This document shows, one piece after another, positions 27,001 to 59,384 of a stretch of DNA of 64,000 nt. Every line of letters begins with the position of its first letter. The first letter of the stretch is position 1. Source of the DNA: Isurus oxyrinchus (taxonomy: Eukaryota); contig JANJGN010000021.1 in assembly GCA_026770705.1 (NCBI GenBank), forward strand, positions 99,262,001 to 99,326,000, given 5' to 3'. A model generated the notes under the pieces. That model searched no databases, had not been told where the DNA came from, and saw nothing but the letters and a program-made list of their open reading frames with translations. The position numbers and the translations under genes were made by a program.

Positions 27001-30000
27001 CCAGCACGGACGCCTGGGTTACTTCTTTCAGCCCATCTGCCAGCACTGACCACTGGGTCAATCCACTCAGTCTATCTCTCAGCAGTGACCCCTGGGTCAC
27101 TCAGCTCGGTCCAACTTCCAGCACTGACCCCTGGGTCACTCCACTCAGCCCATCTCCCAGCACTGACCCCTGGGTCACTCCACTCAGTCCATTTCCAAGC
27201 ACGGATGCCTGGGTTACTCCATTCAGCCCATCACCCAGCACTGACCCCTGGGTCACTCCACTCAGCCCATCTTCCAGCACTGACCCGTGAGTCACTCCAC
27301 TCAGTCCATTTCCAAGCACGGACGCCTGGGTTACTCCATTCAGCCCATCTGCCAGCACTGACCACTGGGTCAATCCACTCAGCCCATCTCCCAGCACTGA
27401 CCCCTGGGTCACTTTGCTCAGTCCATTTCCCAGCACTGAACCCTGGGTCTCTCCACTCAGTCCATCTCCCAGCACTGACCCCTGGGTCCGTCCATTCAGC
27501 CCAACTCCCTACATGTGATTCCAGCGTGAACCTCTCAGTCCATCTCCCAACACTGACCTTTAGGTCACTCCACTCAGTCCATCGCCCAGCATTAACACCT
27601 TGGTCACTCCACTCAGTCCATCTCCTAGCACTGACCCCTGGGTCACTTCACTCAGTCAATTTCCTAGCGCTGACATCTGGGTCACTCCACACAGCATATC
27701 TCCCAGCACTGACCACTGTGTTAGAGCACTCTGTCCATCTCTCAGCATTAACCCTGAGTGGCACCGCTCAGTCCATGTCTCAGCACTGACCCCTGGAACA
27801 ATCTGCTCAATCCATCTCTCGGCGATGAACCCTGGGTCACTCAGCTCAGTCCAACTTCCAGCACTGACCCCTGGGTCACTCCACTCAGTCCATCTCTCAA
27901 CATTAACCCTCGGTGACTTCGCTCAGTCCATGTCTCAGCACTGACCCCTGGGTCACTCCACTCAACCCATCGTCCAGCACTGACCCCTGGGTCACTGTAC
28001 TCAGTCCATTTCCCAGCACTGACGCCTGGGTCACTCCACTCAGCCCATCACCCAGCACTGACCTCTGGGTCACTCCACTCAGTCCATTTCCCAGCACTGA
28101 CCCCTGGGTCACTCCACTCAGTCCATTTCCCAGCATTGACGCCAGGGTCACTCCACTCAGTCCATCTCCCAGCACTGACCCCTGGGTCGCTCCATTCAGC
28201 CCAACTCCCAACATCTGATCCTAGCATGAACCTCTGAATCCATCTCCCAACACTGACCTCCAGGTCACTCCACTCAGTCCATCACCCAGCACTAACCCCT
28301 GGGTCACTCCACTCAGTCCATTTCTCAGCACTGATACCTGGGATACTCCACTCAGCCCATCTCCCAGCACTGACACCTCGGATACTCCACTCAGTCCATC
28401 TCCCAGTACTGATCACTGGCTCACTTCACTCAGCCCATCGCCAAGCACTGACACCTGGGTCACTACACTCAGCCCAGCAGCCAGCACTGACCCCTGGGTC
28501 ACTCCACTCAGCCCATCAGCCAGCACTGACCTCTGGGTCGCTCCACTCAGCCTAACTCCCAACATCTGACCCCAGGATGAACATCTCAGTCCATCTCTCA
28601 GCTCTGACCCCTGGGTCACTCCACTCAGTCCATCTCCCAGCACTGACCCCTGGGTCACTTCACTCAGTCAATTTCCTAGCGCTGACGTCTGGGTCACTCC
28701 ACACAGCCTATCTCCCAGCACTGACCACTGGGTTAGGACACTCAGTCCATCTCTCAGCATTAACCCTCGGTGACACCGCTCAGTCCATGTCTCAGCACTG
28801 ACCCCTGGAACAATCTGCTCAGTCCATCTCTCAGCGCTGAACCCTGGGTCACTCAGCTCGGTCCAACTTCCAGCACTGACCCCTGGGTCACTCCACTCAG
28901 TCCATCTCTCAACATTAACCCTCGGTGACTTCGCTCACTCCATGTCTCAGCACTGACCCCTGGGTCACTTCACTCAGCCCATCGTCCAGCGCTGACCCCT
29001 GGGTTACTCCACTCAGTCTATTTCCCAGCACTGACACCTGGGTCACTCCATTTAGCCCAACTCCCAACATCTGATCCTAGCGTGAACCTCTGAGTCCATC
29101 TCCCAACACTGACCTCCAGGTTACTCCACTCAGTCCATCACCCAGCACTAACCCATAGGTCACTCCACTCAGTCCATCTCTCTGCACTGACCACAGGGTC
29201 ATTCCACTCAGTCCATCTCCCAGCACTGACCACAGGGTCATTCCACTCAGTCCATCACCCAGCACTAACCTCTGGGTCACTCCGCTCAGTCCATCTCTCA
29301 GCACTGATGCCAGGGACACGCCACTCAGCCCATCGTCCAGCATTAACACCTGGGTCACTCCACTCAGACCATTGCCCTACACTGACGCCTGGGTCAGTCC
29401 ACTCAGCCAATCTCCCAGCACTGACTTCATGGTCACTCCATTCAGCCAATCTCCCAGCAATGACCCCTCAGTCACACCACTTCATCCATCACACAGCACT
29501 GACCCCTGGGTCAGTTCACTCAGCTCTTCTCCCAGCACTGATCCCATGGTCACTCCATTCAGCCAATCTCCCAGCACTGAAACCTCGGTCACTCCACTCA
29601 GTCCATCACACAGCACGGACCCCTGGGTCACTCCACTCAGCCCATCACCCAGCAGTGACGCCTGGGTCACTCCACTCAGTCCATTCCCAGCACTGACCAC
29701 TGGGTCGCTCCACTCAGTCCATCTTCCAGCACTAACCCATGGTTCATGCCACTCAGTCCATCTCCAGGCACTGACCACTGGGCCACTCTACTCAGCCCAT
29801 CAGCCAGCACAGACCTCTGGGTCACTCCTCTCAACCCAAGTCCCAACATCTGACCCCAGGGGGAACATCTCAGTCCATGTCTCAGCACTGACCCCTGGGT
29901 CACTCCACGCAGTTCATGTCCCAGCACTGAACCCTGGGTCACTCCACTCAGTCCATTTCCCTGCACTGACGCCTGGGCCACTCCACTTAGCCCATCTCCC

Positions 30001-30531
30001 AGCACTGACCCCTGGGTCACTCCACTCAGTCCATCTCCCAGCACTGACCCCTGGGTCGCTCCATTCAGCCCAACTGCCAACATCTGATCCCAGCGTGAAC
30101 CTCTCAGTCCATCTCCCAACACTGACCTCTAGGTCACTCCACTCAGTCCATCGCCCAGCATTAACCCCTGGGTCACTCCACTCAGCCCATCTCCTAGCTC
30201 TGACCCCATGATCACTTCATTCAGCCAATCTCCCAGCAATGACCCCTGGTTCACTCCACTCTGTCCATCACACAGCACTGGCCCCTGGCTCACGCGGTTC
30301 AGTCCATCTCCTAGCACTGACCACTGGGTTACTGCACTCAGTCCATCTCCCAGCACTGACCACTGAGTCACTCCACTCAGTCCATCTCCCAGCACTGACC
30401 ACTGAGTCACTCCACTCAGTCCATCTTCCAACACTGACCCCTGGTTTGCTCCACTCAGCCCAAGTCCCAACAGCTGATCCCAGGGTGAACCTCTCAGTCC
30501 ATCGCCCAGCACTGACCCCTGGGTAACTCCA
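1..30531. repeat. 39-bp tandem satellite, consensus CAGCACTGACCCCTGGGTCACTCCACTCAGTCCATCTCC, roughly 780 monomers, open at the left edge of the window
   Basis: Monomer visible throughout; the ORF track shows 13-aa periodic translations (GSVLGDGLSGVTQ, SLHSVHLPALTPG, WVTPLSPSPSTDP). Ends abruptly at ...gggtaactcca near 30531. Confidence 0.98.
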
Positions 30532-30534
30532 ATC

Positions 30535-33500
30535 CTTAACGAGCTGGGACTTAAATACTGTTGTTAACGTGCGGGGAATTAACTCCTGTCGTTAACGTGC
30601 TGGGAATTAACTCCTGTCCTTAACGTGCTGGGAATTAACTCCTGTCATTAACGCGCTGGGACTTAACTCCTGTCGTTAACGCGCTGGGAATTAACTCCTG
30701 TCGTTAACGCGCCGGGAATTAACTCCTGTCGTTAACGCGCTGGGAATTAACTCCTGTAATTAACACGCTGGGAATTAACTCCTGTCGTTAATGCGCTGGG
30801 ACTTAACTCCTGTCGTTAACACGCTGGAAATTAACTCCTGTAATTAACGCGCTGGGAATTAACTCCTGTCGTTAAAGTGTGGGGAATTAACTCCTGTCGT
30901 TAACTTGCTGGGAATTAACTCCTGTCGTTAACGCGCTGGGAATTAACTCCTGTAATTAACGCGCTGGGAATTAACTCCTGTTGTTAACGCGCTGTGACTT
31001 AACTCCTGTCGTTAACGTGCTGGGAATTAACTCCTGTAATTAACGCGCTGGGAATTAACTCCTGTCGTTAACGCGCTGTGACTTAACTCCTGTCGTTAAC
31101 GTGCTGGGAATTAACTCCTGTAATTAACGCGCTGGGAATTAACTCCTGTCGTTAACGCGCTGTGACTTAACTCCTGTCGTTAACGTGCTGGGAATTAACT
31201 CCTGTAATTAACGCGCTGGGAATTAACTCCTGTCGTTAACGTGTGGGGAATTAACTCCTGTCTTTAATGCGCGGGGAATTAACTCCTGTCATTAACGCGC
31301 GGGGAATTAACTCCTGTCGTTAACGCGCTGGGAATTAACTCCTGTCGTTAACGCGCTGGGAATTAACTCCTGTCGTTAATACGCTGGGAATTAACTCCTG
31401 TCGTTAACGTGTGGGGAATTAACTCCTGTCGTAAAGTGCTGGGAACTAACTCCTGTCGTTAACGTGTGGGGAATTAACTCCTGTCGTTAACGTGCGGGGA
31501 ATTAACTCCTGTCGTTAACGTGCTGGGAATTAACTCCTGTCGTTAACGTGTGGGGAATTAACTCCTGTCGTTAACGCGCTGGGACTTAACTCCTGTCGTT
31601 AACGCACGGGGAATTAACTCCTGTCGTTAACGTGCTGGGAATTAACTCCTGTCGTTAACGTGCGGGGAATTAACTCCTGTCGTTAACGTGCTGGGAATTA
31701 ACTCCTGTCATTGACGTGCGGGGAATTAACTCCTGTCGTTAACGTGCTGGGAATTAACTCCTGTCGTTAACGTGTGGGGAATTAACTCCTGTCGTTAACG
31801 TGCTGGGAATTAACTCCTGTCATTAACATGTGGGGAATTAACTCCTATCGTTAACGTGCGGGGAATTAACTCCTGTCGTTAACGTGCTGGGAATTAACTC
31901 CTGTTGTTAACGCGCGGGGAATTAACTCCTGTCGTTAATGCGCGGGGAATTATCTCCTGTCGTTAACGTTCGGGGAATTAATTCCTGTCGTTAACGCGCT
32001 GGGAATTAACTCCTGTCGTTAACGTGTGGGGAATTAACTCCTGTCGTTAACGTCCTGGGAATTAACTCCTGTCGTTAACGCGCGGGGAATTAACTCCTGT
32101 CGTTAACGCACTGGGAATTAACTCCTGTCGTTAATGTGCGGGGAATTAACTCCTGTCGTTAACGTGCTGGGAATTAACTCCTGTCGTTAACGTGCGGGGA
32201 ATTAACTCATGTCGTTAAGGTGCTGTGGGAATTAACTCCTGTCGTTAACGTGCTAGGAATTAACTCCTGTCGTTAAGGTGCAGGGAATTAACTCCTGTCG
32301 TTAACGCGCTGGGAATTAACTCCAGTCAATAACATGCTAAGATTTAACTCCTGTCATTAACGTGCGGGGAATTAACTCCTGTCCTTAATGTGCTTGGAAT
32401 TAACTTCTGTTGGTAATGTGCGGGGAATTAACCCCGGTTTTTAACGTCTCGGGAACATACTCCTGTCGTTAACCTGTTGGGAGTTAGCTCCTGTCGTTAA
32501 CGTGCGGGAAATTAACTCCTGTCATTAACGTGCTGGGAATTAACTCCTGCTGTTAACGTGCGGGGAATTAATTCCTGTCTTTAACGCGCTGGGAATGAAC
32601 TGTCATTAATGCGCTGGGAATTAACTCCTGTCATTAACGTGCGGGGAATTAACTCCTGTCATTAACGCGCAGGGAATTAATTCCTGTCGTTAACGTGCAG
32701 GGAATTAACTCCTGTCGTTAACGTGCTGGGAATTAACTCCTGTCGTTAACATGCGGGGAATTAACTCCTGTCGTTAATGCGCGGGGAATTATCTCCTGTC
32801 GTTAACGTTCGGGGAATTAATTCCTGTCGTTAATGCGCTGGGAATTAACTCCTGTCGTTAACGTGTGGGGAATTAACTCCTGTCATTAACGTGCTGGTAA
32901 TTAACTCCTGTCCTTAATGTGCTTGGAATTAACTTCTGTTGGTAACGTGCGGGGAATTAACTCCCGTCGTTAATGTGTGGGGAATTAACTCCTGTCGTTA
33001 TCGTGCTGGGAATTAACTCCTGTCGTTAACGTGCTGGGAATTAACTCCTGTCATTAACGTGCGGGGAATTAACTCCTGTCCTTAACGTGCTGGGAATTAA
33101 CTCCTGTCATTAACGCGCTGGGACTTAACTCCTGTCGTTAACGCGCTGGGAATTAACTCCTGTCGTTAACGCGCTGGGAATTAACTCCTGTCGTTAACGC
33201 GCTGGGAATTAACTCCTGTAATTAACGCGCTGGGAATTAACTCCTGTCGTTAATGCGCTGGGACTTAACTCCTGTAGTTAATGCGCTGGGAATTAACTCC
33301 TGTCGTTAACGTGCTGGGAATTAACTCCTGTCGTTAACGTGCGGGGAATTAACTCCTGTCGTTAACGTGCTGGGAATTAACTCCTGTCATTGGCGTGCGG
33401 GGAATTAACTCCTGTCGTTAACGTGCTGGGAATTAACTCCTGTCGTTAACGTGTGGGGAATTAACTCCTGTCGTTAACGTGTGGGGAATTAACTCCTGTC

Positions 33501-36500
33501 GTTAACGTGCTGGGAATTAACTCCTGTCATTAACATGTGGGGAATTAACTCCTGTTGTTAACGCGCGGGGAATTAACTCCTGTCGTTAATGCGCGGGGAA
33601 TTATCTCCTGTCGTTAACGTTCGGGGAATTAATTCCTGTCGTTAACGCGCTGGGAATTAACTCCTGTCGTTAACGTGCGGGGAATTAACTCATGTCGTTA
33701 AGGTGCTGTGGGAATTAACTCCTGTCGTTAACGTGCTAGGAATTAACTCCTGTCGTTAAGGTGCTGGGAATTAACTCCTGTCGTTAACGCGCTGGGAATT
33801 AACTCCAGTCAATAACATGCTAGGATTTAAATCCTGTCATTAACGTGCGGGGAATTAACTCCTGTCCTTAATGTGCTTGGAATTAACTTCTGTTGGTAAT
33901 GTGCGGGGAATTAACCCCGGTTTTTAACGTCTCGGGAACTTACTCCTGTCGTTAACCTGTTGGGAGTTAGCTCCTGTCGTTAACGTGCGGGAAATTAACT
34001 CCTGTCATTAACGTGCTGGGAATTAACTCCTGCTGTTAACGTGCGGGGAATTAATTCCTGTCTTTAACGCGCTGGGAATGAACTGTCATTAATGCGCTGG
34101 GAATTAACTCCTGTCATTAACGTGCGGGGAATTAACTCCTGTCATTAACGCGCAGGGAATTAATTCCTGTCGTTAACGTGCAGGGAATTAACTCCTGTCG
34201 TTAACGTGCTGGGAATTAACTCCTGTCGTTAACATGCGGGGAATTAACTCCTGTCGTTAATGCGCGGGGAATTAACTCCTATCGTTAACGTGTGGGGAAT
34301 TAACTCCTGTCATTAACGTGCTGGTAATTAACTCCTGTCCTTAATGTGCTTGGAATTAACTTCTGTTGGTAACGTGCGGGGAATTAACTCCCGTCGTTAA
34401 TGTGTGGGGAATTAACTCCTGTCGTTATCGTGCTGGGAATTAACTCCTGTCGTTAACGTGCTGGGAATTAACTCCTGTCATTAACGTGCGGGGAATTAAC
34501 TCCTGTCCTCAACGTGCTGGGAATTAACTCCTGTCATTAACGCGCTGGGACTTAACTCCTGTCGTTAACGCGCTGGGAATTAACTCCTGTCGTTAACGCG
34601 CTGGGAATTAACTCCTGTCGTTAACGCGCTGGGAATTAACTCCTGTAATTAACGCGCTGGGAATTAACTCCTGTCGTTAATGCGCTGGGACTTAACTCCT
34701 GTCGTTAACGCGCTGGGAATTAACTCCTGTCGTTAACGTGCTGGGAATTAACTCCTGTCGTTAACGTGCGGGGAATTAACTCCTGTCGTTAACGTGCTGG
34801 GAATTAACTCCTGTCATTGACGTGCGGGGAATTAACTCCTGTCGTTAACGTGCTGGGAATTAACTCCTGTCGTTAACGTGCTGGGAATTAACTCCTGTCG
34901 TTAACGTGTGGGGAATTAACTCCTGTCGTTAACGTGCTGGGAATTAACTCCTGTCATTAACATGTGGGGAATTAACTCCTGTCGTTAACGTGCTGGGAAT
35001 TAACTCCTGTTGTTAACGCGCGGGGAATTAACTCCTGTCGTTAATGCGCGGGGAATTATCTCCTGTCGTTAACGTTCGGGGAATTAATTCCTGTCGTTAA
35101 CGCGCTGGGAATTAACTCCTGTCGTTAACGTGTGGGGAATTAACTCCTGTCGTTAACGCCCTGGGAATTAACTCCTGTCGTTAACGTCCTGGGAATTAAC
35201 TCCTGTAATTAACGCGCTGGGAATTAACTCCTGTTGTTAACGCGCTGTGACTTAACTCCTGTCGTTAACGTGCTGGGAATTAACTCCTGTAATTAACGCG
35301 CTGGGAATTAACTCCTGTCGTTAACGCGCTGTGACTTAACTCCTGTCGTTAACGTGCTGGGAATTAACTCCTGTAATTAACGCGCTGGGAATTAACTCCT
35401 GTCGTTAACGTGCTGGGACTTAACTCCTGTCTTTAACGTGCGGGGAATTAACTCCTGTCGTTAACGTGCGGGGAATTAACTCCTGTCGTTAATACGCTGG
35501 GAATTAACTTCTGTCGTTAACGTGTGGGGAATTAACTCCTGTCGTAAAGTGCTGGGAACTAACTCCTGTCGTTAACGTGTGGGGAATTAACTCCTGTCGT
35601 TAAAGCGCTGGGAATTAACTCCTGTCGTTAACGTGCAGAGAATTAACTCCTGTCGTTAACACGCTGGGAATTAACTCCTGTCGTTAACGTGCTGGGAATT
35701 AACTCCTGTCGTTAACGTGCTGGGAACTAATTCCTGTCGTTAACGTGTGGGGAATTAACTCCTGTCGTTAACGCGCTGGGACTTAACTCCTGTCGTTAAC
35801 GCACGGGCAATTAACTCCTGTCGTTAACGTGCTGGGAATTAACTCCTGTCGTTAACGTGCGGGGAATTAACTCCTGTCGTTAACGTGCTGGGAATTAACT
35901 CCTGTCATTGACGTGCGGGGAATTAACTCCTGTCGTTAACGTGCTGGGAATTAACCCCTGTCGTTAACGTGCTGGGAATTAACTCCTGTCGTTAACGTGT
36001 GGGTAATTAACTCCTGTCGTTAACGTGCTGGGAATTAACTCCTGTCATTAACATGTGGGGAATTAACTCCTGTCGTTAACGTGCGGGGAATTAACTCCTG
36101 TCGTTAACGCGCTGGGAATTAACTCCAGTCGTTAACGCGCGGGGAATTAACTCCTGTCGTTAATGCGCGGGGAATTATCTCCTGTCGTTAACGTTCGGGG
36201 AATTAATTCCTGTCGTTAACGCGCTGGGAATTAACTCCTGTCGTTAACGTGTGGGGAATTAACTCCTGTCGTTAACGTCCTGGGAATTAACTCCTGTCGT
36301 TAACGCGCGGGGAATTAACTCCTGTCGTTAACGCACTGGGAATTAACTCCTGTCGTTAACGTGCGGGGAATTAACTCCTGTCGTTAACGTGCTGGGAATT
36401 AACTCCTGTCGTTAACGCGCTGGGACTTAACTCCTGTCGTTAATGCGCGGGGAATTAACTCCTGTCGTTAACGCGCTGTGACTTAACTCCTGTCGTTAAC

Positions 36501-39500
36501 GTGCTGGGAATTAACTCCTGTAATTAACGCGCTGGGAATTAACTCCTGTCGTTAACGTGCTGGGACTTAACTCCTGTCTTTAACGTGCGGGGAATTAACT
36601 CCTGTCGTTAACGTGCGGGGAATTAACTCCTGTCGTTAATACGCTGGGAATTAACTTCTGTCGTTAACGTGTGGGGAATTAACTCCTGTCGTAAAGTGCT
36701 GGGAACTAACTCCTGTCGTTAACGTGTGGGGAATTAACTCCTGTCGTTAAAGCGCTGGGAATTAACTCCTGTCGTTAACGTGCAGAGAATTAACTCCTGT
36801 CGTTAACACGCTGGGAATTAACTCCTGTCGTTAACGTGCTGGGAATTAACTCCTGTCGTTAACGTGCTGGGAACTAATTCCTGTCGTTAACGTGTGGGGA
36901 ATTAACTCCTGTCGTTAACGCGCTGGGACTTAACTCCTGTCGTTAACGCACGGGCAATTAACTCCTGTCGTTAACGTGCTGGGAATTAACTCCTGTCGTT
37001 AACGTGCGGGGAATTAACTCCTGTCGTTAACGTGCTGGGAATTAACTCCTGTCATTGACGTGCGGGGAATTAACTCCTGTCGTTAACGTGCTGGGAATTA
37101 ACCCCTGTCGTTAACGTGCTGGGAATTAACTCCTGTCGTTAACGTGTGGGTAATTAACTCCTGTCGTTAACGTGCTGGGAATTAACTCCTGTCATTAACA
37201 TGTGGGGAATTAACTCCTGTCGTTAACGTGCGGGGAATTAACTCCTGTCGTTAACGCGCTGGGAATTAACTCCAGTCGTTAACGCGCGGGGAATTAACTC
37301 CTGTCGTTAATGCGCGGGGAATTATCTCCTGTCGTTAACGTTCGGGGAATTAATTCCTGTCGTTAACGCGCTGGGAATTAACTCCTGTCGTTAACGTGTG
37401 GGGAATTAACTCCTGTCGTTAACGTCCTGGGAATTAACTCCTGTCGTTAACGCGCGGGGAATTAACTCCTGTCGTTAACGCACTGGGAATTAACTCCTGT
37501 CGTTAACGTGCGGGGAATTAACTCCTGTCGTTAACGTGCTGGGAATTAACTCCTGTCGTTAACGCGCTGGGACTTAACTCCTGTCGTTAATGCGCGGGGA
37601 ATTAACTCCTGTCGTTAATGTGCTGGGAATTAACTCCTGTCGTTAACGTGCGGGGAATTAACTCCTGTCGTTAACGTGCTGGGAATTAACTCCTGTCATT
37701 GACGTGCGGGGAATTAACTCCTGTCGTTAACGTGCTGGGAATTAACCCCTGTCGTTAACGTGCTGGGAATTAACTCCTGTCGTTAACGTGTGGGTAATTA
37801 ACTCCTGTCGTTAACGTGCTGGGAATTAACTCCTGTCATTAATATGTGGGGAATTAACTCCTGTCGTTAACGTGCTGGGAATTAACTCCTGTCGTTAACG
37901 CGCTGGGAATTAACTCCAGTCGTTAACGCGCGGGGAATTAACTCCTGTCGTTAATGCGCGGGGAATTATCTCCTGTCGTTAACGTTCGGGGAATTAATTC
38001 CTGTCGTTAACGCGCTGGGAATTAACTCCTGTCGTTAACGTGTGGGGAATTAACTCCTGTCGTTAACGTCCTGGGAATTAACTCCTGTCGTTAACGTGCT
38101 GGGAATTAACTCCTGTCGTTAACGTGCGGGGAATTAACTCATGTCGTTAAGGTGCTGTGGGAATTAACTCCTGTCGTTTAACGTGCTAGGAATTAACTCC
38201 TGTCGTTAAGGTGCTGGGAATTAACTCCTGTCGTTAACGCGCTGGGAATTAACTCCAGTCAATAACATGCTAGGATTTAAATCCTGTCATTAACGTGCGG
38301 GGAATTAACTCCTGTCCTTAATGTGCTTGGAATTAACTTCTGTTGGTAATGTGCGGGGAATTAACCCCGGTTTTTAACGTCTCGGGAACATACTCCTGTC
38401 GTTAACCTGTTGGGAGTTAGCTCCTGTCGTTAACGTGTGGGGAATTAACTCCTGTCGTTAACGTCCTGGGAATTAACTCCTGTCGTTAACGTGCTGGGAA
38501 TTAACTCCTGTCGTTAACGTGCGGGGAATTAACTCATGTCGTTAAGGTGCTGTGGGAATTAACTCCTGTCGTTTAACGTGCTAGGAATTAACTCCTGTCG
38601 TTAAGGTGCTGGGAATTAACTCCTGTCGTTAACGCGCTGGGAATTAACTCCAGTCAATAACATGCTAGGATTTAAATCCTGTCATTAACATGCGGGGAAT
38701 TAACTCCTGTCCTTAATGTGCTTGGAATTAACTTCTGTTGGTAATGTGCGGGGAATTAACCCCGGTTTTTAACGTCTCGGGAACATACTCCTGTCGTTAA
38801 CCTGTTGGGAGTTAGCTCCTGTCGTTAACGTGCGGGAAATTAACTCCTGTCATTAACGTGCTGGGAATTAACTCCTGCTGTTAACGTGCGGGGAATTAAT
38901 TCCTGTCTTTAACGCGCTGGGAATGAACTGTCATTAATGCGCTGGGAATTAACTCCTGTCATTAACGTGCGGGGAATTAACTCCTGTCATTAACGCGCAG
39001 GGAATTAATTCCTGTCGTTAACGTGCAGGGAATTAACTCCTGTCGTTAACGTGCTGGGAATTAACTCCTGTCATTAACGTGCTGGCTATTAACTCCTGTC
39101 GTTAACGCGCTGGGAATTAACTCCTGTCGTTAACGTGCTGGGAATTAACTCCTGTCGTTAACATGCGGGGAATTAACTCCTGTCGTTAATGTGCTGGGAA
39201 TTAACTCCTGTCGTTAAGGTGCTGGGAATTAACTCCTGTCGTTAACGCGCTGGGAATTAACTCCAGTCAATAACATGCTAGGATTGAACTCCTGTCGTTA
39301 ACGTGCGGGGAATTAACTCCTGTCATTAACGTGCTGGTAATTAACTCCTGTCCTTAATGTGCTTGGAATTAACTTCTGTTGGTAATGTGCGGGGAATTAA
39401 CCCCGGTTTTTAACGTCTCGGGAACTTACTCCTGTCGTTAACCTGTTGGGAGTTAGCTCCTGTCATTAACGTGCGGGAAATTAACTCCTGTCATTAACTT

Positions 39501-40710
39501 GCTGGGAATTAACTCCTGCTGTTAACGTGCGGGGAATTAATTCCTGTCTTTAACGCGCTGGGAATGAACTGTCATTAACGCGCTGGGAATTAACTCCTGT
39601 CGTTAACGTGCGGGGAATTAACTCCTGTCATTAACGCGCTGGGAATTAACTCCTGTCGTTAACGCGCAGGGAATTAACTCCTGTCGTTAATGTGCTGGTA
39701 ATTAACTCCTGTCATTAACGTGCTGGGAATTAACTCCTGTCGTTAACGTGCTGGGAATTAACTCCTGTCGTTAACGTGCTGGGAATTAACTCCTGTCATT
39801 AACATGTGGGGAATTAACTCCTGTTGTTAACGTGCTGGGAATTAACTCCTGTCGTTAACGTGTGGGGAATTAACTCCTGTCGTTAACGTGCGGGGAATTA
39901 ACTCCTGTCATTAACGTTCTGGGAATTAACTCCTGTCATTAGCATGTGGGGAATTAACTCCTGTCGTTAACGCGCTGGGAATTAATTCCTATCGTTAACG
40001 CGCTGGTAATTAACTCCTGTCGTTAACGCGCGGGGAATTAACTCCTGTCGTTAACGCACTGGGAATTAACTCCTGTCGTTAACGCGCTGGGAATTAACTC
40101 CTGTCGTTAACGTGCGGGGAATTAACTTCTGTCGTTAACGTGCGGGGAATTAACTCCTGTCATTAACGTGCTGGGAATTAACTCCTATCTTCAACCTGCT
40201 GGTAATTAACTCCTGTCATTAATGTTCCGGGAATAAACTCCTGTCTTTAACGTGCTGGGAACTTCTCCTGTTGTTAATATGCTGGGAATTAACTCCTGTC
40301 GTTAACATTTTGGGAATTAACTCCTGTCATTAATGCTCTGGGAATTAACCCCTTTTGTTAATGTGCTGGGAATTAACTCCTGTTAACGCACTGGGAATTA
40401 ACTCCTGTCATTAACATTCCGGGAATAAACTCTTGTCATTAATGCTCTGGGAATTAACCCCTGTTGTTAACGAACTGGGAATTAGCTCCTGTCGTTAACG
40501 TGCATTGATGTAACACCTGTCGTTAACGAGCTTGGAATTGACTCCTGTCGTTAACGTGCTGGGAATTACCTCCTGTTGTTAACGTGCTGGGAATTGACTC
40601 CTGTCGTTGGCATGCCTGCAATTACCCCCTTTCATGAACCTATTTGAAATGATCTACTTTCGTTAGCTTGCTGCTAATTAACTCCTCTTGATGTGCTTGG
40701 AAGTTAAATC
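30535..40710. repeat. 28-bp tandem satellite, consensus GTTAACGTGCTGGGAATTAACTCCTGTC, roughly 360 monomers, decaying from about 40180
   Basis: Period counted directly (e.g. line 31321). Two TTAA per monomer give stops on both strands, matching the absence of ORFs from 30526 to 41316. Confidence 0.98.
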
Positions 40711-43465: not shown

Positions 43466-44171
43466 TGTATGACCCTCTTCCTGGTCTAAAGGTTTCTGTC
43501 TTGGATATCAACTCTACACAACAACTTGGATGCAGTTCCACAAAAGGAGATAGACCTTTATTAAACCACTAAGCAATTGTACACACTCACAACAATACCA
43601 GTTACTTATCTTCCCTCTGAGCTGGAGTCCGTCTCATTGGTCAATCCAATGACGAATCCTCCGTGCACGTCTTCTAAACAACTGACCAAATTGCCCTGAC
43701 CGCTGCAGGAATGGTGATTCTGTGGACACTTTATACTTTTTCTTGCTATGACCCTGTGCCCTTTAAGGTAAAGCCAGCTTTTAGTCCATTTAATTGGTTT
43801 TTAATTACATCCCGTACATGTACCCTGGTGTAACCCCCTTTGAAGGTCACACTTGATTTAACAAAGCCAGCTTGACTCCACTTTGTTATCTCCAACACTT
43901 AGCAATCTCCAGAATGGGAAGAAGGCAGCACATTTATTGCCCGTTAATGAAGCTCAGTCTGTTTATCTTCCCTGGTACAAACCCTCCTACAGGTTAGGCC
44001 ATTTTACAGAACTTGCTGATTCTATCAAGGTTTTCACTTGACTAAATTAGCCATCATGCTTTGTGTTTTAAGCCCGCAGTGCAGTTTAGTGCAGTTCTTT
44101 ATATACCTTCCATCTGGGTCCTCCTTATACCTTGATGTTCTGTGTTACCCCCATGAAACGCATTCCACACA
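43466..44171 (-). mobile_element. Possible solo LTR-like element in reverse orientation
   Basis: TGT...ACA ends, reversed polyA signal (tttatt near 43557) and reversed TATA (tttata near 43730). No target-site duplication found. Confidence 0.3.
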
Positions 44172-44340
44172 AGGGGTTAAACCAGAACCAGTCCATATTA
44201 ATTAATATAAAATAAATGAAGAAACAATTACATAGTTGAACTGTGATTGTACATTAATAAGAGAGATAGTATGTTGTTTTAGACCTTCACCACTGAGCAG
44301 ACACTTTGTGATTGCTGATTAACTGTTTGGTCACTGACAG

Positions 44341-44616
44341 GAATTCACATTCTTCAATGGATTCGGTCTGTTGAGGTCACTGAAGATGGCTCCATTAAGA
44401 GATCGATGCGAGTTGGATTTGATGGAAAGGATTATATTAGTTTAGAGCCAGGCAGAATGAGGTGGGTTGCATCCAATCACATTGCAGTGAAGACTAAAGA
44501 GAAATGGGATTCTGATGAAACCTGGAACAACTACTGGGAAAATCATCTACAACAAGTATATGTTCAACGTTTAAAGCAATATTTACAAGCTGGGAAGGAA
44601 TATTTCAAAAGGAAAG
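44341..44616 (+). CDS. MHC class I-like heavy chain, alpha2 exon (nonclassical)
   Basis: cag|GA...G|gtattt, 276 bp, phase 1-1 (canonical class I exon 3 size). GIHILQWIRSVEVTEDGSIKRSMRVGFDGKDYISLEPGRMRWVASNHIAVKTKEKWDSDETWNNYWENHLQQVYVQRLKQYLQAGKEYFKRK, no stops. Confidence 0.95.
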
Positions 44617-44733
44617 GTATTTATTTTATTTTTGACCCCATCTTCTGATCTAACTTCACTGGTCTATGAAAGCGTTCTCCCATTCCATTCAGTGTCTGTC
44701 TATTGTTTGTGTTTTCACCCTTTCCCATTACAG

Positions 44734-45004
44734 TTCAGCCTGAAGTGTTCATCTCCAGAAGTGACCCCAATAGTCAGTACAAGCCGCTCACTCTCTCCTG
44801 CCTGGTTACTGGGTTTTATCCTGTAGACATCGAGGTGAGCTGGCTAAGGAATGGAGAGGTAATGTCTGAGACACTATCCTCGGGGGTTCGACCCAACCAC
44901 GATGGGACCCATCAGATCGAGAAAGAGATTGAAATAAATGCTGAGGATGAGGATCAATACTCCTGTCAAATTGAACACAGCAGCCTGGCAGAGACCCAGC
45001 TCTC
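44734..45004 (+). CDS. MHC class I-like heavy chain, alpha3 (Ig C1-set) exon, 3' end lost in N gap
   Basis: Follows a 117-bp GT-AG intron (44617-44733) in phase 1. VQPEVFIS...LSCLVTGFYPVDIEVSWLRNG...PNHDGTHQ...YSCQIEHSSL has the C1-set Cys-Trp-Cys pattern. Confidence 0.95.
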
Positions 45005-45190
45005 NNNNNNNNNNNNNNNNNNNNNNNNNNNNNNNNNNNNNNNNNNNNNNNNNNNNNNNNNNNNNNNNNNNNNNNNNNNNNNNNNNNNNNNNNNNNNNNN
45101 NNNNNNNNNNNNNNNNNNNNNNNNNNNNNNNNNNNNNNNNNNNNNNNNNNNNNNNNNNNNNNNNNNNNNNNNNNNNNNNNNNNNNNNNNN
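45005..45190. other. Assembly gap (run of N)
   Basis: 186 N bases. Confidence 0.99.
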
Positions 45191-45917: not shown

Positions 45918-46925
45918 TATAGAAACAGGATTAAGCTATTCAATCACTTGAGTCTGCTCCACCATTCATTGGGATCCTGACTGATCAGGTCCATTTACCC
46001 AATATTGTTCCATATCTCTCTCTGCTCTTCCCCAGCAAAGATCTCTCCATCTCAGTCTGGAAAATCTCAGTTGATCCCCAGCTCCCACAGCCTCTTGCTG
46101 GAGAGAGTTCCAGATGTCCACTGCCCTTTTTGTGAAGATTCACTTCCTGATTTCACTTCTAAATGACCTCACTCTAATTTGAAGAAGATTCTCTCTTGTT
46201 CAGGATTCCATCATCAGAGAAAATAGTTTCTCTCTCTCAACCCTATCAACTCCCTTTATCATTTTAAACATCTCCATCAGATCATCCTTCACCCTGTTAA
46301 ACACAAGGAAATACATGTCAGCTATATAGAACCTGTCCTCATAACTGAAACCTCTGAGCTGTGAGATCATTCTGCTGAATCTGCACTGTTCCCCCTCCAA
46401 GACCAATATATCTGATGTGAGGTTTGGTGTCCAGAACTGAATGTCATTCTCCAGATGGAGTCTAACCAAAGCTCTGTACAACTGAAGCATCATTTCCTCA
46501 CTTTGTGTTCAAACCCCCTTGAGATAAAGGACAACAGCCCATTAGCCTTTCTGATTGATTTTTTATAACAGTGAACTGGCGTTTAGTGACTTCTGTACAT
46601 AGCCATCCACATCTCTGATTTTGTACAGCTCCTAGACTCTGAACATGATGATAATATTCCAATTTGTCTCTCCCAGATTTAATGTGGGTGATCCCACACT
46701 TCCCAACATTGGGGAAAACTGTTGCAGATGGAATTCACTCATTTAATCTGTCAATGTCCCTTCACTGTGTCTCCTAACTTAGTGTCATCTGTAAACTTGG
46801 ATATACGACTCTCTGTTCCTGCATCCAAGCCATGAATATAGACGGTGAAAAGCTGAGGCCCCAGTCCAGATCCCTGGGGAATACAACTTATCACATCCTG
46901 CCAATGTCCCCGGTCAGACATGGGA
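45918..46925 (-). mobile_element. Older 5'-truncated CR1 LINE
   Basis: ORFs 46200-46493 (LYRALVRLHLE..QFWTP) and 46751-46999 (IPQGSGLGPQLFTVYI..ISKFTDDTKLG) are CR1 RT and C-terminal motifs. Confidence 0.85.
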
Positions 46926-46927
46926 AT

Positions 46928-49900
46928 GAAACATAGAAAATTGGAACAGGAGTAGGTCATTCGGCCCTTTGAGCCTGCTCTGCCCTTCAACATGATCATG
47001 GCTGATCCTCTATCTCAACACCAAAGTCCCCCTCTCTCCCCATACCCCCTGATGCATTCAGAGTTTAGAAACCTATCTATTTCCTTCTTAACTATATTCA
47101 ATGACTTGACTTCCACAGCCCTCTGTGATAGAGAATTCCACAGGCTCATCACCCTCTGAGTGAAGACATTTCTCCTCATTCCAGCACTAAATGGCCTACC
47201 TTGTATCCTGCGATTGTGACTCCTTGTTCTAGACCCCCCAGCCAGAGGAAATATCATCCCTGCATCCAGTCTGTCCAGCCCTGTCAGAATTTTATATGTT
47301 TCAGTGAGATCTCCTCTCATTCTTCTGAGCTCCAGTGAATACAGGCCTGATTGGACAAGCTCTCCTCATACAACAATCCTGCCATCCCAGGAACTAGTCT
47401 GGTGAACCTTCCCTGTACTCCCTCTATGGCAAGAATATCCTTTCTTAGGTAAGGAGACCGAAACTGCACACAGTACTCCAGGTGTGGTCTCACCAAGGCC
47501 CCGGACAGCTGCACTAAAATATCCTCACTCCTGTACTCAAGCCCTATCGCAATGAAGGCCACCATAGAATTTACCTTCTCCACTGCTTGCTGTACCTGCA
47601 TGCTTGCTTTCAGTGATGGATGTACAAGGACACCCAGGTCCCTTTGTACATCAACATTTCCCAATCTATCACCATTTACATAATATTCTGCCATTCTGTT
47701 TTTCCCACCAAAGTGGATAACTTCACACTTATCCACATTATTCTGCATCTGCCATGCATTTGCTGATTCACTCAACTTGTCTAAATCGCCTTGAAGCCTC
47801 TTAACATCCTGCTCACCACTCACATTCCCACCTAGTTTTGTGTTGCCAGCAAACTTGGAAATATTATATATTACATTCCCTCATCCAAATGGCTGATACA
47901 TATTGTGAAAAGCTGGGGCACAAGTACTGATCCTTGTGGTACCCCACTAGTCACTGCCTGCCATTTCAAAAAAGACCCATTTATTCCCATTCTCTGTTTC
48001 CTGTCTGCTAACCAATTATCAATCCATGCCAATGTATTACCCCCAATCCCATATGCTTTAATTTTACACACTAACTTCTTATGTGGGAGTTTATCAAAAG
48101 CTTTCTGGAAATCTAAATACACCACATCCACTTGTTCTCCCTTATCTAATCTGCTAGTTACATCCACAAAAAACTCTGATAGGTTTGTCAAAAATGATTT
48201 CCCTTTCATAAATCCATGTTGACTTTGTTTAATCCTGTTGATATTTTCTAAGTGTCCTGTTATTACATCCTTTCTAATAGACTTGAGCATTTCCCCTACC
48301 ACAGATGTTAGGCTAACCAGTCTTTAATTCCTTGTTTCCTTCCTCCCTCCTTTTCTAAATAGTGGGTTACATTTGCCACCCTCCAATCAGCGGGGACTGT
48401 TCCAGAATCTACAGAATTTCCATGGCCACCTCTTTCAGTACCCTGGGATGTAGATTATGAGGTCCTGAGGATTTATTGGCTTTCGGTCCCATTAATTTCT
48501 CCAGCACTGTTTTTTCAGTAATACTAATTTCCTTCAATTCCTCCTTCTCACTAGGCCCTCGATTCCCTAGCATTTCTGGGAAGTTATTTGTGTCTTCTCC
48601 ATGAAGACAGAACAAAAGTATTTGTTTAATTGCTCTGCCATTTTCATGTTCTCTATTATAAAGTCTCCCGTTTCGGACTGTAAGGGACCTACATTTGTCT
48701 TCACTAATCTTTTTCTTCTTACATACTTATAGAAACTTTTACAGTCCTCTTTTATGCTCCTTGCAAGTTTACTCTCAAACTCTATTTTTCCCCTTTTAAT
48801 CAATCTCTTGGTCTCCCTTTGCTGAATTCTAAACTGCTTCCAATCCTCAAGCTTGTTACTTTTTCAAGCAACTTTCTATGACTCCTCTTTGGATCTAAAA
48901 CTAACCCTAATTTATTTTGTTACCTATGTTTGGGCCATTTTCATGTGTTTTTGTGCCTGAAAGGAATATATAACTCTTGCATTGCAGGCATTCGTTCCTT
49001 CAGTATTAACCATTGCCTATTCACCATCATGCCTTTTAATGAAGTCCCCCAGTCTACCTTAGCCAACTCATGCCCCATTCTTTCATCGTTTCCTTGCTTA
49101 GATTTAGGACCCTAGTTTCAGTTTGGACTACTTCACTTTGCTACCTAAGGAAGAGTTCTATCATGTTATGGTCACTGTTCCCTAAAGGACCCTGCACAAC
49201 AAGATTATTAATGAACCCCTTCCCATTGCACAATACCAAATCTAGGTTAGCCTGTTCACTAGTTGGTTTCTCGATGTACTGTTCTAAAAAAAAATAATCC
49301 TGCACACACTCCAGGAATTGATCTGCCACAGTATTATTGCTAATTCGGTTTGCCCAGTCCATATGTAAATTAAAGTCACCCATGGTCACTGTAGCACCCT
49401 TGTTACATGCATCTCTAATTTCCTGTATAATACCACCTCCTACCTTACCACTACTGTTTAGAGGCCTATAGACAACTCTCTCTAATATTTTCCACCCCTT
49501 GTTGCTTCTTAGCTCCACCCAGACTGATTCTAACTCTAGATTTTCTGAGCCAATATCATCTCTCACTATTGCACTGATCTCATCTTTAACTAACAATGCC
49601 ACGCAACCTCCTTATCCTTTTTGCCTGTCCACCCTAAATACCGAGTACCTTTGGATGTTCAGTTCCCAGCCTTGGCCATCTTGCAGCCATGTCTCCATAA
49701 TTGCAATCATATTGTAACTCTTTACATCTATTTGCGCTGTTAATTCATCTACCTTATTGCGAATGCGCCATGCATTCAGATCCAGAGCCTTTAGACTTGT
49801 CTTTCTACACATCTTTTTGTACTATGGCCCTATTTGCTGCTAGCCCTTGTTCTCTCTGCCTTCCACTTTTGCTTTTTTATTTTTCTGTCTTTCATTCTAT

Positions 49901-51159: not shown

Positions 51160-51276
51160 AAATCCCAGAAAAGAGTGGACAACTCCTGCATCCTGGAATT
51201 GTAACAGGATTAGTGATCGTTGGAATTTGCACGTTTGGGATAATTGCAATCTACATTTGCAAAAGACAACAGAGAG
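51160..51276 (+). CDS. MHC class I-like connecting peptide/transmembrane exon
   Basis: tttcag|AA...G|gtaaga, 117 bp, phase 1-1. EIPEKSGQLLHPGIVTGLVIVGICTFGIIAIYICKRQQR: hydrophobic span plus basic stop-transfer. Confidence 0.88.
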
Positions 51277-51286
51277 GTAAGAATCC

Positions 51287-51629
51287 GAGAGAGGGGAATG
51301 TGGAACTGAGGGGACAGAGTGAGTATGGGCGGAATCTCCAGTACTGGGAGTGCAGGACACTGAGAGGGGAGAGTGAGAGAGAAGGGAATGTAGAATTGAA
51401 GGGACAGAGTGAGTGTGGGGGAATCTCCAGTACTGGGAGTACAGGACACTGAGAGGGGAGAGTGAGAGAGAGGGGAATGTGGAATTGAGGGGACAGAGTG
51501 AGTGTGGGGGAATCTCCAGTACTGGGAGTGCAGGACACTGAGAGGGGAGAGTGAGAGAGAGGGGAATGTGGAACTGAGGGGACAGAGTGAGTGTGGGGGA
51601 ATCTCCAGTACTGGGAGTACAGGACACTG
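51287..51629. repeat. 89-bp intronic minisatellite, about 3.8 copies
   Basis: gaatctccagtactgggag recurs at 51332, 51421, 51510 and 51599. Confidence 0.95.
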
Positions 51630-51955: not shown

Positions 51956-51988
51956 ATTCACCAAGTGTGACCTACACAACAGCTCAGA
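51956..51988 (+). CDS. Class I cytoplasmic exon 1 (33 bp, DSPSVTYTTAQ)
   Basis: tgcag|AT...A|gtaagt, phase 1-1. Same size and YxxA motif as mammalian class I exon 6. Confidence 0.88.
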
Positions 51989-52799: not shown

Positions 52800-53310
52800 G
52801 ACGTTCCCAGAGCCTCATTGATGAATAACTGGATTTCCCTGTTCTAGTGTGAACATGGACATCATCGACCATCCTTCCATATCACAGCAGACACACAGAT
52901 TCACAGCTCATTGTCTACACTGAGTGCTTTGATGATGGAGATCTATTTTTCCTGGGAATGTGCTTCCACAGATTGAACAGTGGATCCTGGATCCACCAGG
53001 TTGGGATCCTGATTCTTCAAGTGGGACTTTCTCAAGTAGTGTTTCCATTCAGTATCCACAATGTGACGGCTCTCACAGTCAAAGGGAACTTCAGGGATGA
53101 TTTTCCCTCACACTTTCTTATCTTCAACAACTTGTTCAGGTCGAGTGATTGACCTGAACAGAGTAAATGTCATGAGGCAACTGAGAGAGACACATTTTAT
53201 ATTAATAGAAGCTGATCTATTTTGCACTTTCTGTAGTGTCAGATTTACACTGTTATATAATGTACATGTATAAAATTTTATGATTAAAGTATATTCATGG
53301 ACAAAAACCT
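52800..53310 (+). other. Non-coding terminal (3'UTR) exon of the + strand class I gene
   Basis: Acceptor ccactgcag conserved in the inverted paralog (61375); ATTAAA at 53283-53288 in an AT-rich tract. End inferred. Confidence 0.65.
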
Positions 53311-56829: not shown

Positions 56830-57030
56830 AAGTGTAAGGATGGAGGGGAGTGTGGGAATGAGTATTTCTTACACAATCTCCATTCCCTCACACCTGTTGT
56901 GTTCTCGCTCTCTGATAATGGATTATTCCCCATTCTAACTGACATTTCTTTTGCTTCTGCAGATTCACCAAGTGTGACCTACACAACAGCTCAGAGTAAG
57001 TGACTGAGGGACAGATTGTTGGGAATGAAA
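56827..57030 (+). pseudogene. Orphan ~200-bp duplicate carrying class I cytoplasmic exon 1 (exon 56963-56995)
   Basis: Exon identical (33/33) to 51956-51988, with intact ag/gt sites and highly similar flanks. No TM exon or cytoplasmic exon 2 beside it. Confidence 0.9.
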
Positions 57031-59383: not shown

Positions 59384-59384
59384 C

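What the first reader, a model, noticed from the sequence alone, without database searches (positions are those of the whole stretch)
44341..44616. Class I alpha2 domain with no disulfide and a half-conserved groove
Seen: the intact 276-bp exon has no cysteine. Aligned by eye to HLA-A2 numbering it has G100S, C101V (GTT, two changes from TGT), C164Y, Y159H and W167R. It keeps Q96, D119/G120/D122 (beta2m contacts), Y123, T143, K146, W147 and Y171. Established: C101-C164 is nearly invariant in class I; T143/K146/W147 hold the peptide C-terminus; Y159/W167 close the N-terminal end. Inference: a nonclassical, beta2m-binding molecule that lost both cysteines, possibly anchoring a ligand carboxylate while the other end of the groove is remodelled. 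Sharks have named nonclassical lineages (UBA, UCA, UDA, UEA); I cannot tell whether this belongs to one of them or is new.
Basis: partly seen in the sequence, partly recalled or inferred. Interest (0 to 1): 0.75.

Follow-up and report, generated by a model that had tools for sequence, protein, structure and literature searches.

The report
Disulfide-free shark MHC class Ib gene
This is a transcribed shark non-classical MHC class I gene whose alpha2 domain has no disulfide bond, but its whole large shark-only gene family lacks that bond, so this copy is an ordinary member of an unusual family that is already catalogued.

Summary
Exon 44341-44616 is a real, spliced MHC class I alpha2 exon (Pfam MHC_I, E 5e-16) with no cysteine: V at position 101, Y at 164, H at 159, R at 167. 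Q96, D119/G120/D122, T143, K146, W147 and Y171 are kept.

It is not a decaying one-off. Its near-twin is an annotated great white shark protein (alpha2 88/91 identical, transmembrane exon 38/38). It belongs to a multigene family found in 13 shark species. None of 95 alpha2 domains in that family has Cys101, against 174 of 181 in other class I hits. The family is a single clade (support 99), separate from the UAA/UBA-like clade that includes rays and chimaeras.

RNA-like public runs hold the exons without the introns, spliced alpha1-alpha2-alpha3-TM. The alpha1 and leader exons are not in the window; 40 kb of minisatellite lies upstream.

The family is very probably the published UEA lineage, being shark-only, multicopy and in the class Ib cluster. 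No sequence named UEA could be obtained, so that label is inferred.

The scan found the same thing before on other DNA of this genome (s1-871379, s1-871685). Ligand and function are untested.

The parts
1..30531 (+). 39-bp minisatellite (unit reads LSPSPSTDPWVTP in one frame). It fills the far part of the intron between the unseen alpha1 exon and alpha2.
   Evidence: TRF, 28000-30531 scanned: 65 copies, 76% matches; uniform GC 0.57 and GC skew -0.43 from base 1 to 30000; the open frames read the same 13-residue period throughout. The bamboo shark model P0006 reads the same peptide repeat between its alpha1 and alpha2.
30524..40608 (+). 28-bp minisatellite, about 360 copies, abutting the 39-bp array.
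   Evidence: 86% matches, score 14408. Searches show both ends of the array.
44341..44616 (+). Alpha2 exon, 276 nt, phase 1, no cysteine. This is the finding.
   Evidence: 88/91 identical to P0182; three overlapping contigs of run X1 cover 44340-44616 with 0 other letters.
44617..44733 (+). Intron 3, 117 nt, GT..AG.
   Evidence: table 5: a joint skipping 117 letters in X1 and X7. Table 2: zero depth at 44646-44713 in X1, X6 and X7, but depth in the DNA-like run X19.
44734..45004 (+). Alpha3 exon (C1-set Ig domain). Its last few codons and its donor lie in the N run 45005-45190, which I did not fill.
   Evidence: C1-set E 9.6e-18; 87/90 identical to P0182. N run.
46203..49611 (-). Decayed LINE (endonuclease plus reverse transcriptase in several broken frames) inside the alpha3-TM intron.
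   Evidence: ORFs. RVT_1 4.7e-18, Exo_endo_phos_2 2e-07.
51160..51276 (+). Connecting-peptide and transmembrane exon, 117 nt.
   Evidence: cag|...|gtaag; 38/38 identical to P0182; the X6 loose end behind 45003 ends with the first 21 letters of this exon.
51287..51629 (+). 89-bp tandem repeat (3.8 copies) starting 11 nt after the TM exon donor.
51956..51988 (+). Cytoplasmic exon (D)SPSVTYTTAQ.
   Evidence: ctgcag|...|gtaagt.
52800..52828 (+). Last coding exon, (R)RSQSLIDE plus TAA stop at 52826-52828.
   Evidence: P0182 ends RHSQSLIDE.

Best explanation
The exon belongs to a transcribed non-classical MHC class I (class Ib) heavy-chain gene of a lamniform shark. It is the counterpart of an annotated great white shark gene. 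It is a member of a large shark-only class Ib family, very probably the published UEA lineage. The ancestor of that family replaced the Cys101-Cys164 bridge with a hydrophobic pair: V101 against L/F/Y164.

Shown: the exon and its splicing; family membership; family-wide absence of Cys101; conservation of the beta2m-contact residues and of T143/K146/W147; a very conserved alpha3; and variation concentrated in alpha1 and in the 158-173 stretch of the alpha2 helix.

Inferred: the protein folds as a normal class I molecule with beta2m. V101 packs against Y164 where the disulfide would be. One end of the groove is a conserved anchor site. The other end differs from paralog to paralog, so each paralog binds a different, still unknown ligand.
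For: Exon identity: Pfam MHC_I 5e-16 and C1-set 1e-17; class I chains in the PDB.

Ortholog: P0182 of Carcharodon carcharias matches alpha2 88/91, alpha3 87/90 and TM 38/38. The downstream exons are all open to a stop.

Transcription: in runs X1, X6 and X7 contigs lie on the exons only. There is a GT..AG joint 44616|44734. A loose end before 44341 reads ..EILKMTNQTS, which is the alpha1 end of P0182. X1 covers the whole alpha2 exon with 0 differences. X6 runs on into the TM exon.

Family: 108 hits at E<=1e-20 among 434 candidates, the family rows from 13 shark species; the ray, teleost and other divergent rows at the foot of that list are only 32-40% identical to the query. Cys101 is present in 0/95 family alpha2 domains, and 73/95 have no Cys at all. 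Other class I domains have C101 in 174/181 and C164 in 164/181. Other chondrichthyan class I has C101 in 68/70 and C164 in 69/70.

Tree of 153 rows: the 75 family rows form one clade (SH-aLRT 99, stem 0.70). It is apart from the 70-row clade holding Triakis UAA, nurse shark 6LUP, rays and chimaera.

Conservation in the family: Q96 90/95, D119 93, G120 95, D122 94, W147 94, K146 85, T143 69, Y171 67, Y159 20, W167 0.

Column entropy: alpha1 1.52, alpha2 0.94, alpha3 0.38. The most variable alpha2 columns are at 158-173 and 99-100.

Structure: the AlphaFold2 model of P0182 has block pLDDT 82-93 over residues 21-190, with the class I strand and helix pattern. Foldseek gives class I chains at E about 1e-25, TM 0.76-0.84 and 28-34% identity among the 49 rows listed.

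UEA label: Verissimo 2023 (PMC10751288, passages) places multicopy UEA with UDA and UFA in one class Ib cluster. The 2025 review (PMC12562908, passages) names only UBA and UEA as expanded shark families, with UBA derived from UAA and UEA more ancient.
Against: No leader or alpha1 exon is in the window (residues 1-103 of P0182, P0189 and P0176 find nothing at E<1). This copy's completeness therefore rests on RNA contigs that could come from an allele or a near-identical paralog.

The runs are only guessed to be RNA.

The alpha3 contigs of all four runs differ from the window at 44919 and 44944, so the window's exact alpha3 was not seen.

No sequence named UEA was available. All 80 of 80 members of ten clusters carry generic names, and the two J Immunol papers are not held.

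As I recall the abstract, UEA lacks the nine invariant groove residues and has a markedly hydrophobic groove. This family keeps K146, W147 and mostly T143, and my crude hydropathy comparison shows no clear difference (0.18 +/- 0.32 against 0.07 +/- 0.33).

Beta2m binding, surface expression and ligand are untested. The structure was modelled without beta2m and its coordinates could not be inspected, so the V101-Y164 contact is inferred.
Confidence: 0.8

Rival explanations
1. This copy is a truncated relic (alpha2 to the 3' end only) cut off from its promoter, leader and alpha1 by the 40-kb minisatellite. The transcripts seen come from an allele or a near-identical paralog.
For: No alpha1 or leader anywhere in 64 kb. 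40.6 kb of tandem repeat lies directly upstream. The window's exact alpha3 letters at 44919 and 44944 are absent from all four runs. Orphan copies of the cytoplasmic exon in the window show that family fragments do exist.
Against: All five exons present are open with good splice sites, and the last one ends in a stop as in P0182. Only 3 of 91 and 3 of 90 residues differ from the great white shark ortholog. X1 contigs are identical to the window over the full 276 nt, while the nearest paralogs among the hits are at most 91% identical in protein. The bamboo shark model P0006 has the same minisatellite peptide between alpha1 and alpha2, so a repeat-filled intron 2 is normal for this family.
Confidence: 0.1
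2. The family is not UEA but a shark class Ib lineage that has not been described in print. The disulfide loss would then be unreported.
For: No named UEA sequence was matched. Retention of T143/K146/W147 and the unremarkable groove hydropathy fit my recollection of the UEA abstract poorly.
Against: With 75 or more distinct RefSeq models in 13 shark genomes, including whale shark and bamboo shark, the family is too large to have been missed by authors who searched those genomes. The accessible papers name only two expanded shark families. The other, UBA, is said to derive from UAA, which fits the multicopy subclade inside the UAA-like clade of my tree. Three large subclades in the family (14, 23 and 32 rows) match the three UEA sublineages that I recall. 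A UFA gene is noted 343 kb upstream (s1-864188, not checked by me), and UFA is said to lie in the UDA/UEA cluster.
Confidence: 0.08
3. It is a classical-type peptide presenter that merely lost the disulfide.
For: T143, K146, W147 and Y171 are kept. The N86 glycosylation site (NQT) is kept. The best fold matches are classical class I chains.
Against: Y7, Y59, Y159 and W167 are all replaced, and position 84 is M. It is a multigene family with an almost invariant alpha3, lying outside the UAA clade. Verissimo 2023 reports a single MHC-Ia gene per elasmobranch genome.
Confidence: 0.02

Closest known systems
Shark UEA non-classical class I lineage (Almeida et al., J Immunol 2021; paper not held here, features recalled; placed in the genome by Verissimo et al. 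2023, PMC10751288)
   Same: Shark-only, multicopy, lying in the MHC class Ib cluster, divergent from UAA/UBA, several sublineages, and an altered set of groove-end residues.
   Different: No named UEA sequence could be compared. This family keeps K146/W147 (85 and 94 of 95) and mostly T143, and my crude measure does not show it to be more hydrophobic. I could not check whether the paper states the loss of the alpha2 cysteines.
Carcharodon carcharias RefSeq protein 'class I histocompatibility antigen, F10 alpha chain-like isoform X2' (P0182, 348 aa)
   Same: Alpha2 88/91, alpha3 87/90, TM 38/38. Same cytoplasmic exons and the same alpha1 end as the RNA contigs. Also V101/Y164/H159/R167.
   Different: Three residues differ in alpha2 (I/V at 94, G/D at 129, N/S at 158) and the tail reads RRSQ against RHSQ. 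It comes from another species or assembly.
Classical shark class I UAA (nurse shark 6LUP; Triakis scyllium AAB97342)
   Same: Same domain plan, the N86 glycosylation site, the beta2m-contact residues and a C1-set alpha3. 34% identity and TM 0.83 to the model.
   Different: The UAA/UBA-like clade keeps C101 (68/70), C164 (69/70), Y159 (67/70) and W167 (64/70). It includes rays and chimaeras and is a separate clade.
Chicken YF1*7.1 (PDB 3P73, 9EB3), a non-classical class I that presents lipids/N-myristoylated glycine according to the entry titles
   Same: Best sequence match of the alpha2 exon in the PDB (E 9e-14). It is a class Ib molecule with a remodelled groove.
   Different: YF1*7.1 keeps the alpha2 disulfide (alignment). 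There is no evidence that the shark family binds lipid.

Membership tests
MHC class I heavy chain (Pfam MHC_I + C1-set) | Alpha2 matches the MHC_I profile above the curated cut-off | tested here: met
   59.2 bits against a cut-off of 28.3, E 5e-16.
MHC class I heavy chain (Pfam MHC_I + C1-set) | Membrane-proximal C1-set Ig domain with its two cysteines, followed by a TM segment | tested here: met
   C1-set 64.8 bits. LSCLVTG and YSCQIEH; hydrophobic TM exon.
MHC class I heavy chain (Pfam MHC_I + C1-set) | Alpha1 domain and leader | tested here: inconclusive
   Absent from the window. Present on RNA-like contigs joined to this alpha2.
Classical class Ia (UAA) | Cys101-Cys164 disulfide | tested here: not met
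   V and Y at these positions.
Classical class Ia (UAA) | Invariant peptide-terminus residues (Y7, Y59, R/Y84, T143, K146, W147, Y159, Y171) | tested here: not met
   In the window T143, K146, W147 and Y171 are kept and Y159 is H. In ortholog P0182 position 7 is V, 59 is H and 84 is M.
Classical class Ia (UAA) | Groups with named UAA sequences in a tree | tested here: not met
   separate clade, support 99.
Shark UBA | Close to UAA (review PMC12562908); found also in rays and chimaeras (recalled) | tested here: not met
   the family lies outside the UAA/UBA-like clade; no ray or chimaera member; the best ray hits are 36-37% identical.
Shark UEA | Found in sharks only (recalled from the abstract) | tested here: met
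   13 shark species of Galeomorphii, Hexanchiformes and Pristiophoriformes; none from rays or chimaeras.
Shark UEA | Multicopy (PMC10751288) | tested here: met
   many distinct models per species; several expressed paralogs at 90-95% identity.
Shark UEA | Lies in the class Ib cluster with UDA and UFA (PMC10751288) | not tested
Shark UEA | Clusters with named UEA reference sequences | not testable with these tools
   No named UEA protein in the hits. Papers not held. Supplements closed.
Shark UEA | Groove more hydrophobic than UAA; invariant residues not conserved (recalled) | tested here: inconclusive
   0.18 against 0.07 mean hydropathy with sd 0.3, positions mapped by eye; four of the eight residues are changed, but K146/W147 are kept.

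The most novel reading that the evidence does not exclude
The family is a natural experiment: a class I groove built without the alpha2 disulfide. One end, the T143/K146/W147 carboxylate anchor, is held constant. The other end, around 99-100 and 158-173 and including position 164 itself, is the most variable part of alpha2 between paralogs. This would make it a battery of receptors for ligands that share a C-terminal or acidic anchor but differ at the other end, for example N-terminally modified or extended peptides or lipopeptides. Such molecules might fold without the redox editing that the peptide-loading complex applies to Cys101-Cys164 in classical molecules. If the published UEA work did not point out the missing bond, that family-wide loss, dating to before the split of squalomorph and galeomorph sharks, would itself be unreported.
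Probability: 0.12. Interest if true: 0.6.

Novelty: new member of a known kind. Interest (0 to 1): 0.3.

Why it matters
The Cys101-Cys164 bond is close to universal in class I and class I-like molecules; here 174 of 181 other class I alpha2 domains have Cys101. In mammals it is the bond handled by the peptide-loading machinery. A whole old gene family that does without it, yet is expressed and keeps its beta2m-contact and C-terminal-anchor residues, is a useful comparison. It bears on how the groove is stabilised and on what non-classical class I molecules bound early in vertebrate immunity. For this particular exon the message is modest: it is a normal member of that family, and the scan had already reached the same family elsewhere in this genome.

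Tried and rejected
Simple decay of one copy: rejected, because all 95 family alpha2 domains lack Cys101 and the exon is spliced into RNA-like contigs.

UAA/UBA membership: rejected by the tree.

Getting the lineage name from databases: failed. RefSeq names are generic (80 of 80 members read). One search gave named Triakis UAA, which I used as the classical reference.

Reading the UBA and UEA papers (J Immunol 2020 and 2021): not held, by DOI, PMC id or PubMed id. What I say of their content is recalled.

Paper searches found no accessible text that states whether UEA or UCA lack the alpha2 cysteines. PMC6769792 (one passage) had nothing on it. The supplementary files of Verissimo 2023, which may list the UEA genes of the white shark, are closed and could settle the label.

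Groove hydropathy: inconclusive. Positions were mapped by eye, and the 6LUP reference row is locally misaligned at the start of alpha2.

A solved structure of the family: none. The best PDB identity among the 49 listed Foldseek rows is 34%.

Looking for the alpha1 exon in the window: none.

I wondered whether the 28-bp repeat unit derives from the alpha2 acceptor junction. Only about nine letters agree by eye, so I dropped it.

I did not build or search a joined exon model. Exons were searched one by one, and the annotated ortholog P0182 stood in for the whole protein in the tree and the fold.

About ten bases of the alpha3 exon end and its donor lie in the N run 45005-45190. I did not fill them.

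Rows left out of the tree: fused multi-domain models (P0151, P0152, P0273, P0274, P0277); short or partial isoforms (P0225, P0228-P0248, P0353, P0375 and the short first-search hits); proteins without a named source (P0241, P0318, P0369, P0373); and all non-chondrichthyan hits except six outgroup rows.

Full report
THE EXON. Window 44341-44616 is flanked by AG (44339-40) and GT (44617-18). Only one frame is open. It reads 91 codons from 44343 (IHILQW...KRK), with two bases before and one after, so the exon is in phase 1 as class I alpha2 exons are. It contains no cysteine.

Pfam places it on positions 93-177 of the 179-position MHC_I profile (E 5e-16, 59 bits against a cut-off of 28). A search of PDB sequences finds 490 class I chains at E<=0.01. 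The best is chicken YF1*7.1 (E 9e-14). The printed alignment sets S-V opposite the G-C of the floor strand and Y opposite the helix cysteine.

The HLA-A2 numbers are my own mapping by eye, with one residue fewer in the 104-110 loop and one more after W147. With that mapping Q96, D119, G120, D122, Y123, T143, K146, W147 and Y171 are present.

THE GENE AROUND IT. After a 117-nt intron comes the alpha3 exon, from 44734 (C1-set, E 1e-17). Its last few codons and its donor are hidden in the N run 45005-45190, which I left unfilled.

A 6-kb intron follows. It holds a broken LINE on the minus strand (RVT_1 4.7e-18, endonuclease 2e-07). Next come a connecting-peptide/TM exon at 51160-51276, a cytoplasmic exon at 51956-51988 and a last exon at 52800-52828 ending in TAA.

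Upstream there is no leader or alpha1 exon anywhere in the window. tblastn with three family proteins finds nothing for residues 1-103 at E<1, and motif and DNA-pattern searches also find nothing. Instead, 1-30531 is a 39-bp minisatellite and 30524-40608 a 28-bp minisatellite. If the gene is whole, its intron 2 is longer than 44 kb.

TRANSCRIPTION. The one run search found 24 runs, none on record as RNA. I laid four of the 24 on 44000-45004.

In three runs guessed to be RNA (X1, X6, X7; three studies) contigs lie on the two exons only. Depth is zero at 44102-44339 and at 44646-44713. A fourth run, X19, covers the introns too and behaves as DNA.

A joint 44616|44734 with GT..AG ends is seen in X1 and X7. 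In all three RNA-like runs a contig goes on before 44341 for 132 to 255 letters. The 30 letters printed read ..EILKMTNQTS, that is, the end of an alpha1 domain with the N86 glycosylation site.

In X1 three overlapping contigs cover 44340-44616 with no difference from the window. Behind 45003 the contigs go on, and one X6 loose end finishes with the first 21 letters of the TM exon at 51160.

Against this: the RNA label is a guess; contigs are not single transcripts; and the alpha3 contigs of all four runs differ from the window at 44919 and 44944. Many further contigs at 90-95% identity show that several paralogs are expressed. Two of them read IMNVEV and ITIIEV across positions 98-103, so they too have no Cys101.

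RELATIVES. A profile-free search of 1.84 billion representatives with the alpha2 peptide gave 440 hits at E<=0.001. The closest single-domain hits (65-77% identical) are RefSeq models from horn shark, basking shark, bamboo shark and catshark, all with generic names.

A second search with one of them (P0003, residues 20-290) gave 108 proteins at E<=1e-20 among 434 candidates. The family members among them come from 13 shark species, including Heptranchias and Pristiophorus. The best ray proteins are only 36-37% identical.

The nearest protein is P0182 of the great white shark: alpha2 88/91, alpha3 87/90, TM 38/38. Its alpha1 ends ..NEILKMTNQTS, exactly as on the RNA contigs. No protein identical to the window's was listed, so the window seems to come from another lamniform species or from an unannotated assembly. 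I did not pursue which.

THE CYSTEINES ACROSS THE FAMILY. I cut every alpha2 domain out of the 253 proteins then in hand, which gave 276 domains in 246 proteins, and aligned them.

- In the 95 domains at least 50% identical to the window's, position 101 is V 86, A 3, I 2, L 2 and gap 2. It is never C.
- Position 164 is L 30, F 24, Y 11 and C 9, with others making up the rest.
- 73 of the 95 have no cysteine at all.
- In the other 181 class I alpha2 domains C101 is present in 174 and C164 in 164.

After a third search with Triakis UAA (P0037; 438 hits at E<=1e-25, best 120 listed), 70 other chondrichthyan class I rows show C101 in 68 and C164 in 69. The loss is therefore a trait of the lineage, not of this copy.

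TREE. The tree has 153 rows: 75 family, 72 other chondrichthyan and 6 bony-vertebrate outgroup rows. It covers the alpha1-alpha3 columns and used the IQ-TREE quick search.

- The family is one side of a branch with SH-aLRT 99 on a stem of 0.70.
- The clade with Triakis UAA, nurse shark 6LUP, horn shark, rays and chimaera (70 rows) is separate (support 94). It contains a multicopy shark subclade that fits what the 2025 review says of UBA.
- P0182 sits in a lamniform group of six (support 97).
- Two ray proteins join the family stem, but the program warns that these are long branches.
- The family itself has three large subclades (14, 23 and 32 rows).

WHICH NAMED LINEAGE. Verissimo et al. 2023 (PMC10751288; passages only) say that elasmobranch class Ib genes lie in two clusters. 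One holds UDA (single copy), UEA (multicopy) and UFA; the other holds only UBA. The 2025 review (PMC12562908; passages) says that sharks have two expanded families, UBA derived from UAA and UEA more ancient.

From memory of the 2021 abstract, which I could not fetch, UEA is shark-only, absent from rays and chimaeras, very multigenic, has three sublineages and has altered groove-end residues. A shark-only, highly multicopy family outside the UAA/UBA clade fits UEA and nothing else that is named.

The label remains an inference, because no protein named UEA was among the hits. Two recalled features fit poorly. The family keeps K146 and W147 and mostly T143. A crude groove hydropathy comparison is inconclusive.

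HOW IT PROBABLY WORKS. Shown:

- The residues that contact beta2m in other class I molecules are nearly invariant in the family: Q96 90/95, D119 93, G120 95, D122 94.
- W147 (94), K146 (85), T143 (69) and Y171 (67) are mostly kept. Y159 is kept in only 20 and W167 in none.
- Position 7 is V in 48 of 75. The Y59 position is F 34, Y 30, H 5. The R84 position is variable.
- Alpha3 is far more uniform than in other chondrichthyan class I (entropy 0.38 against 1.32), while alpha1 is the most variable domain (1.52).
- Within alpha2 the variable columns cluster at 99-100 and 158-173, and include 164 itself.
- The AlphaFold2 model of P0182, built on a 70-sequence family alignment, has block pLDDT 82-93 over residues 21-190 with the usual strand and helix order. 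Mean pLDDT is 74.3 and pTM 0.59, and alpha3 is modelled less well.
- Foldseek matches that model to classical class I, YF1 and MR1 chains at E about 1e-25 and TM 0.76-0.84 among the 49 rows listed.

Inferred: a beta2m-bound class I fold in which V101 packs against an aromatic or aliphatic 164 in place of the bridge; a conserved anchor site at the C-terminal end of the groove; and a paralog-specific other end. The ligand class is unknown.

VERDICT. The exon is real and is as described. The gene is very probably a working member of a known, old, shark-only class Ib family (UEA), all of whose members lack the alpha2 disulfide. The same reading was reached earlier in this scan on another piece of the genome (s1-871379), and two paralogs were noted 82 kb upstream (s1-871685).

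It is a new species' copy of a known kind. The family-wide loss of the bond is worth a specialist's glance only if the UEA paper did not already state it.

Noticed in passing
window 1-40608: Two abutting minisatellites, a 39-bp unit up to 30531 and a 28-bp unit up to 40608, fill at least 40 kb upstream of alpha2, in what must be intron 2 if the gene is whole. The 39-bp unit reads LSPSPSTDPWVTP. The bamboo shark gene model P0006 carries the same peptide repeat between alpha1 and alpha2 as read-through intron, so the repeat seems to be an old feature of this family's intron 2.
   Followed up: partly
window 56962-56994 (+) and 63550-63582 (-): Two more copies of the 33-nt cytoplasmic exon (DSPSVTYTTAQ) with about 150 nt of matching flank on each side and intact splice sites. 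No TM or alpha exons lie nearby in the window. They are either leftovers of family duplications, or the minus-strand copy is the 3' part of a neighbour gene that runs off the window's end.
   Followed up: partly
window 51287-51629: An 89-bp tandem repeat, 3.8 copies at 94% matches, begins 11 nt after the donor of the TM exon. Other notes of this scan describe splice-donor minisatellites in class I introns of this genome.
   Followed up: no
window 46203-49611 (-): A decayed LINE (endonuclease plus reverse transcriptase, several broken frames) inside the alpha3-TM intron.
   Followed up: yes
window 54847-55137 (+): Remnant of a Harbinger/PIF-type DDE transposase (DDE_Tnp_4, E 9e-10).
   Followed up: yes
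window 44034-44101: RNA-like contigs of X1 and X6 lie on about 60 nt of the intron upstream of alpha2, with 5 differences and unrelated sequence on both sides. This is probably a repeat fragment expressed from elsewhere.
   Followed up: no
window 44000-45004, run X19: One run of unknown kind lays 943 contigs on this 1-kb stretch at very high depth, introns included. It looks like targeted or amplicon sequencing of this gene family in a related organism.
   Followed up: no
window 59300-60100: A TG/CA-rich low-complexity tract around the second N run (59428-59614).
   Followed up: no
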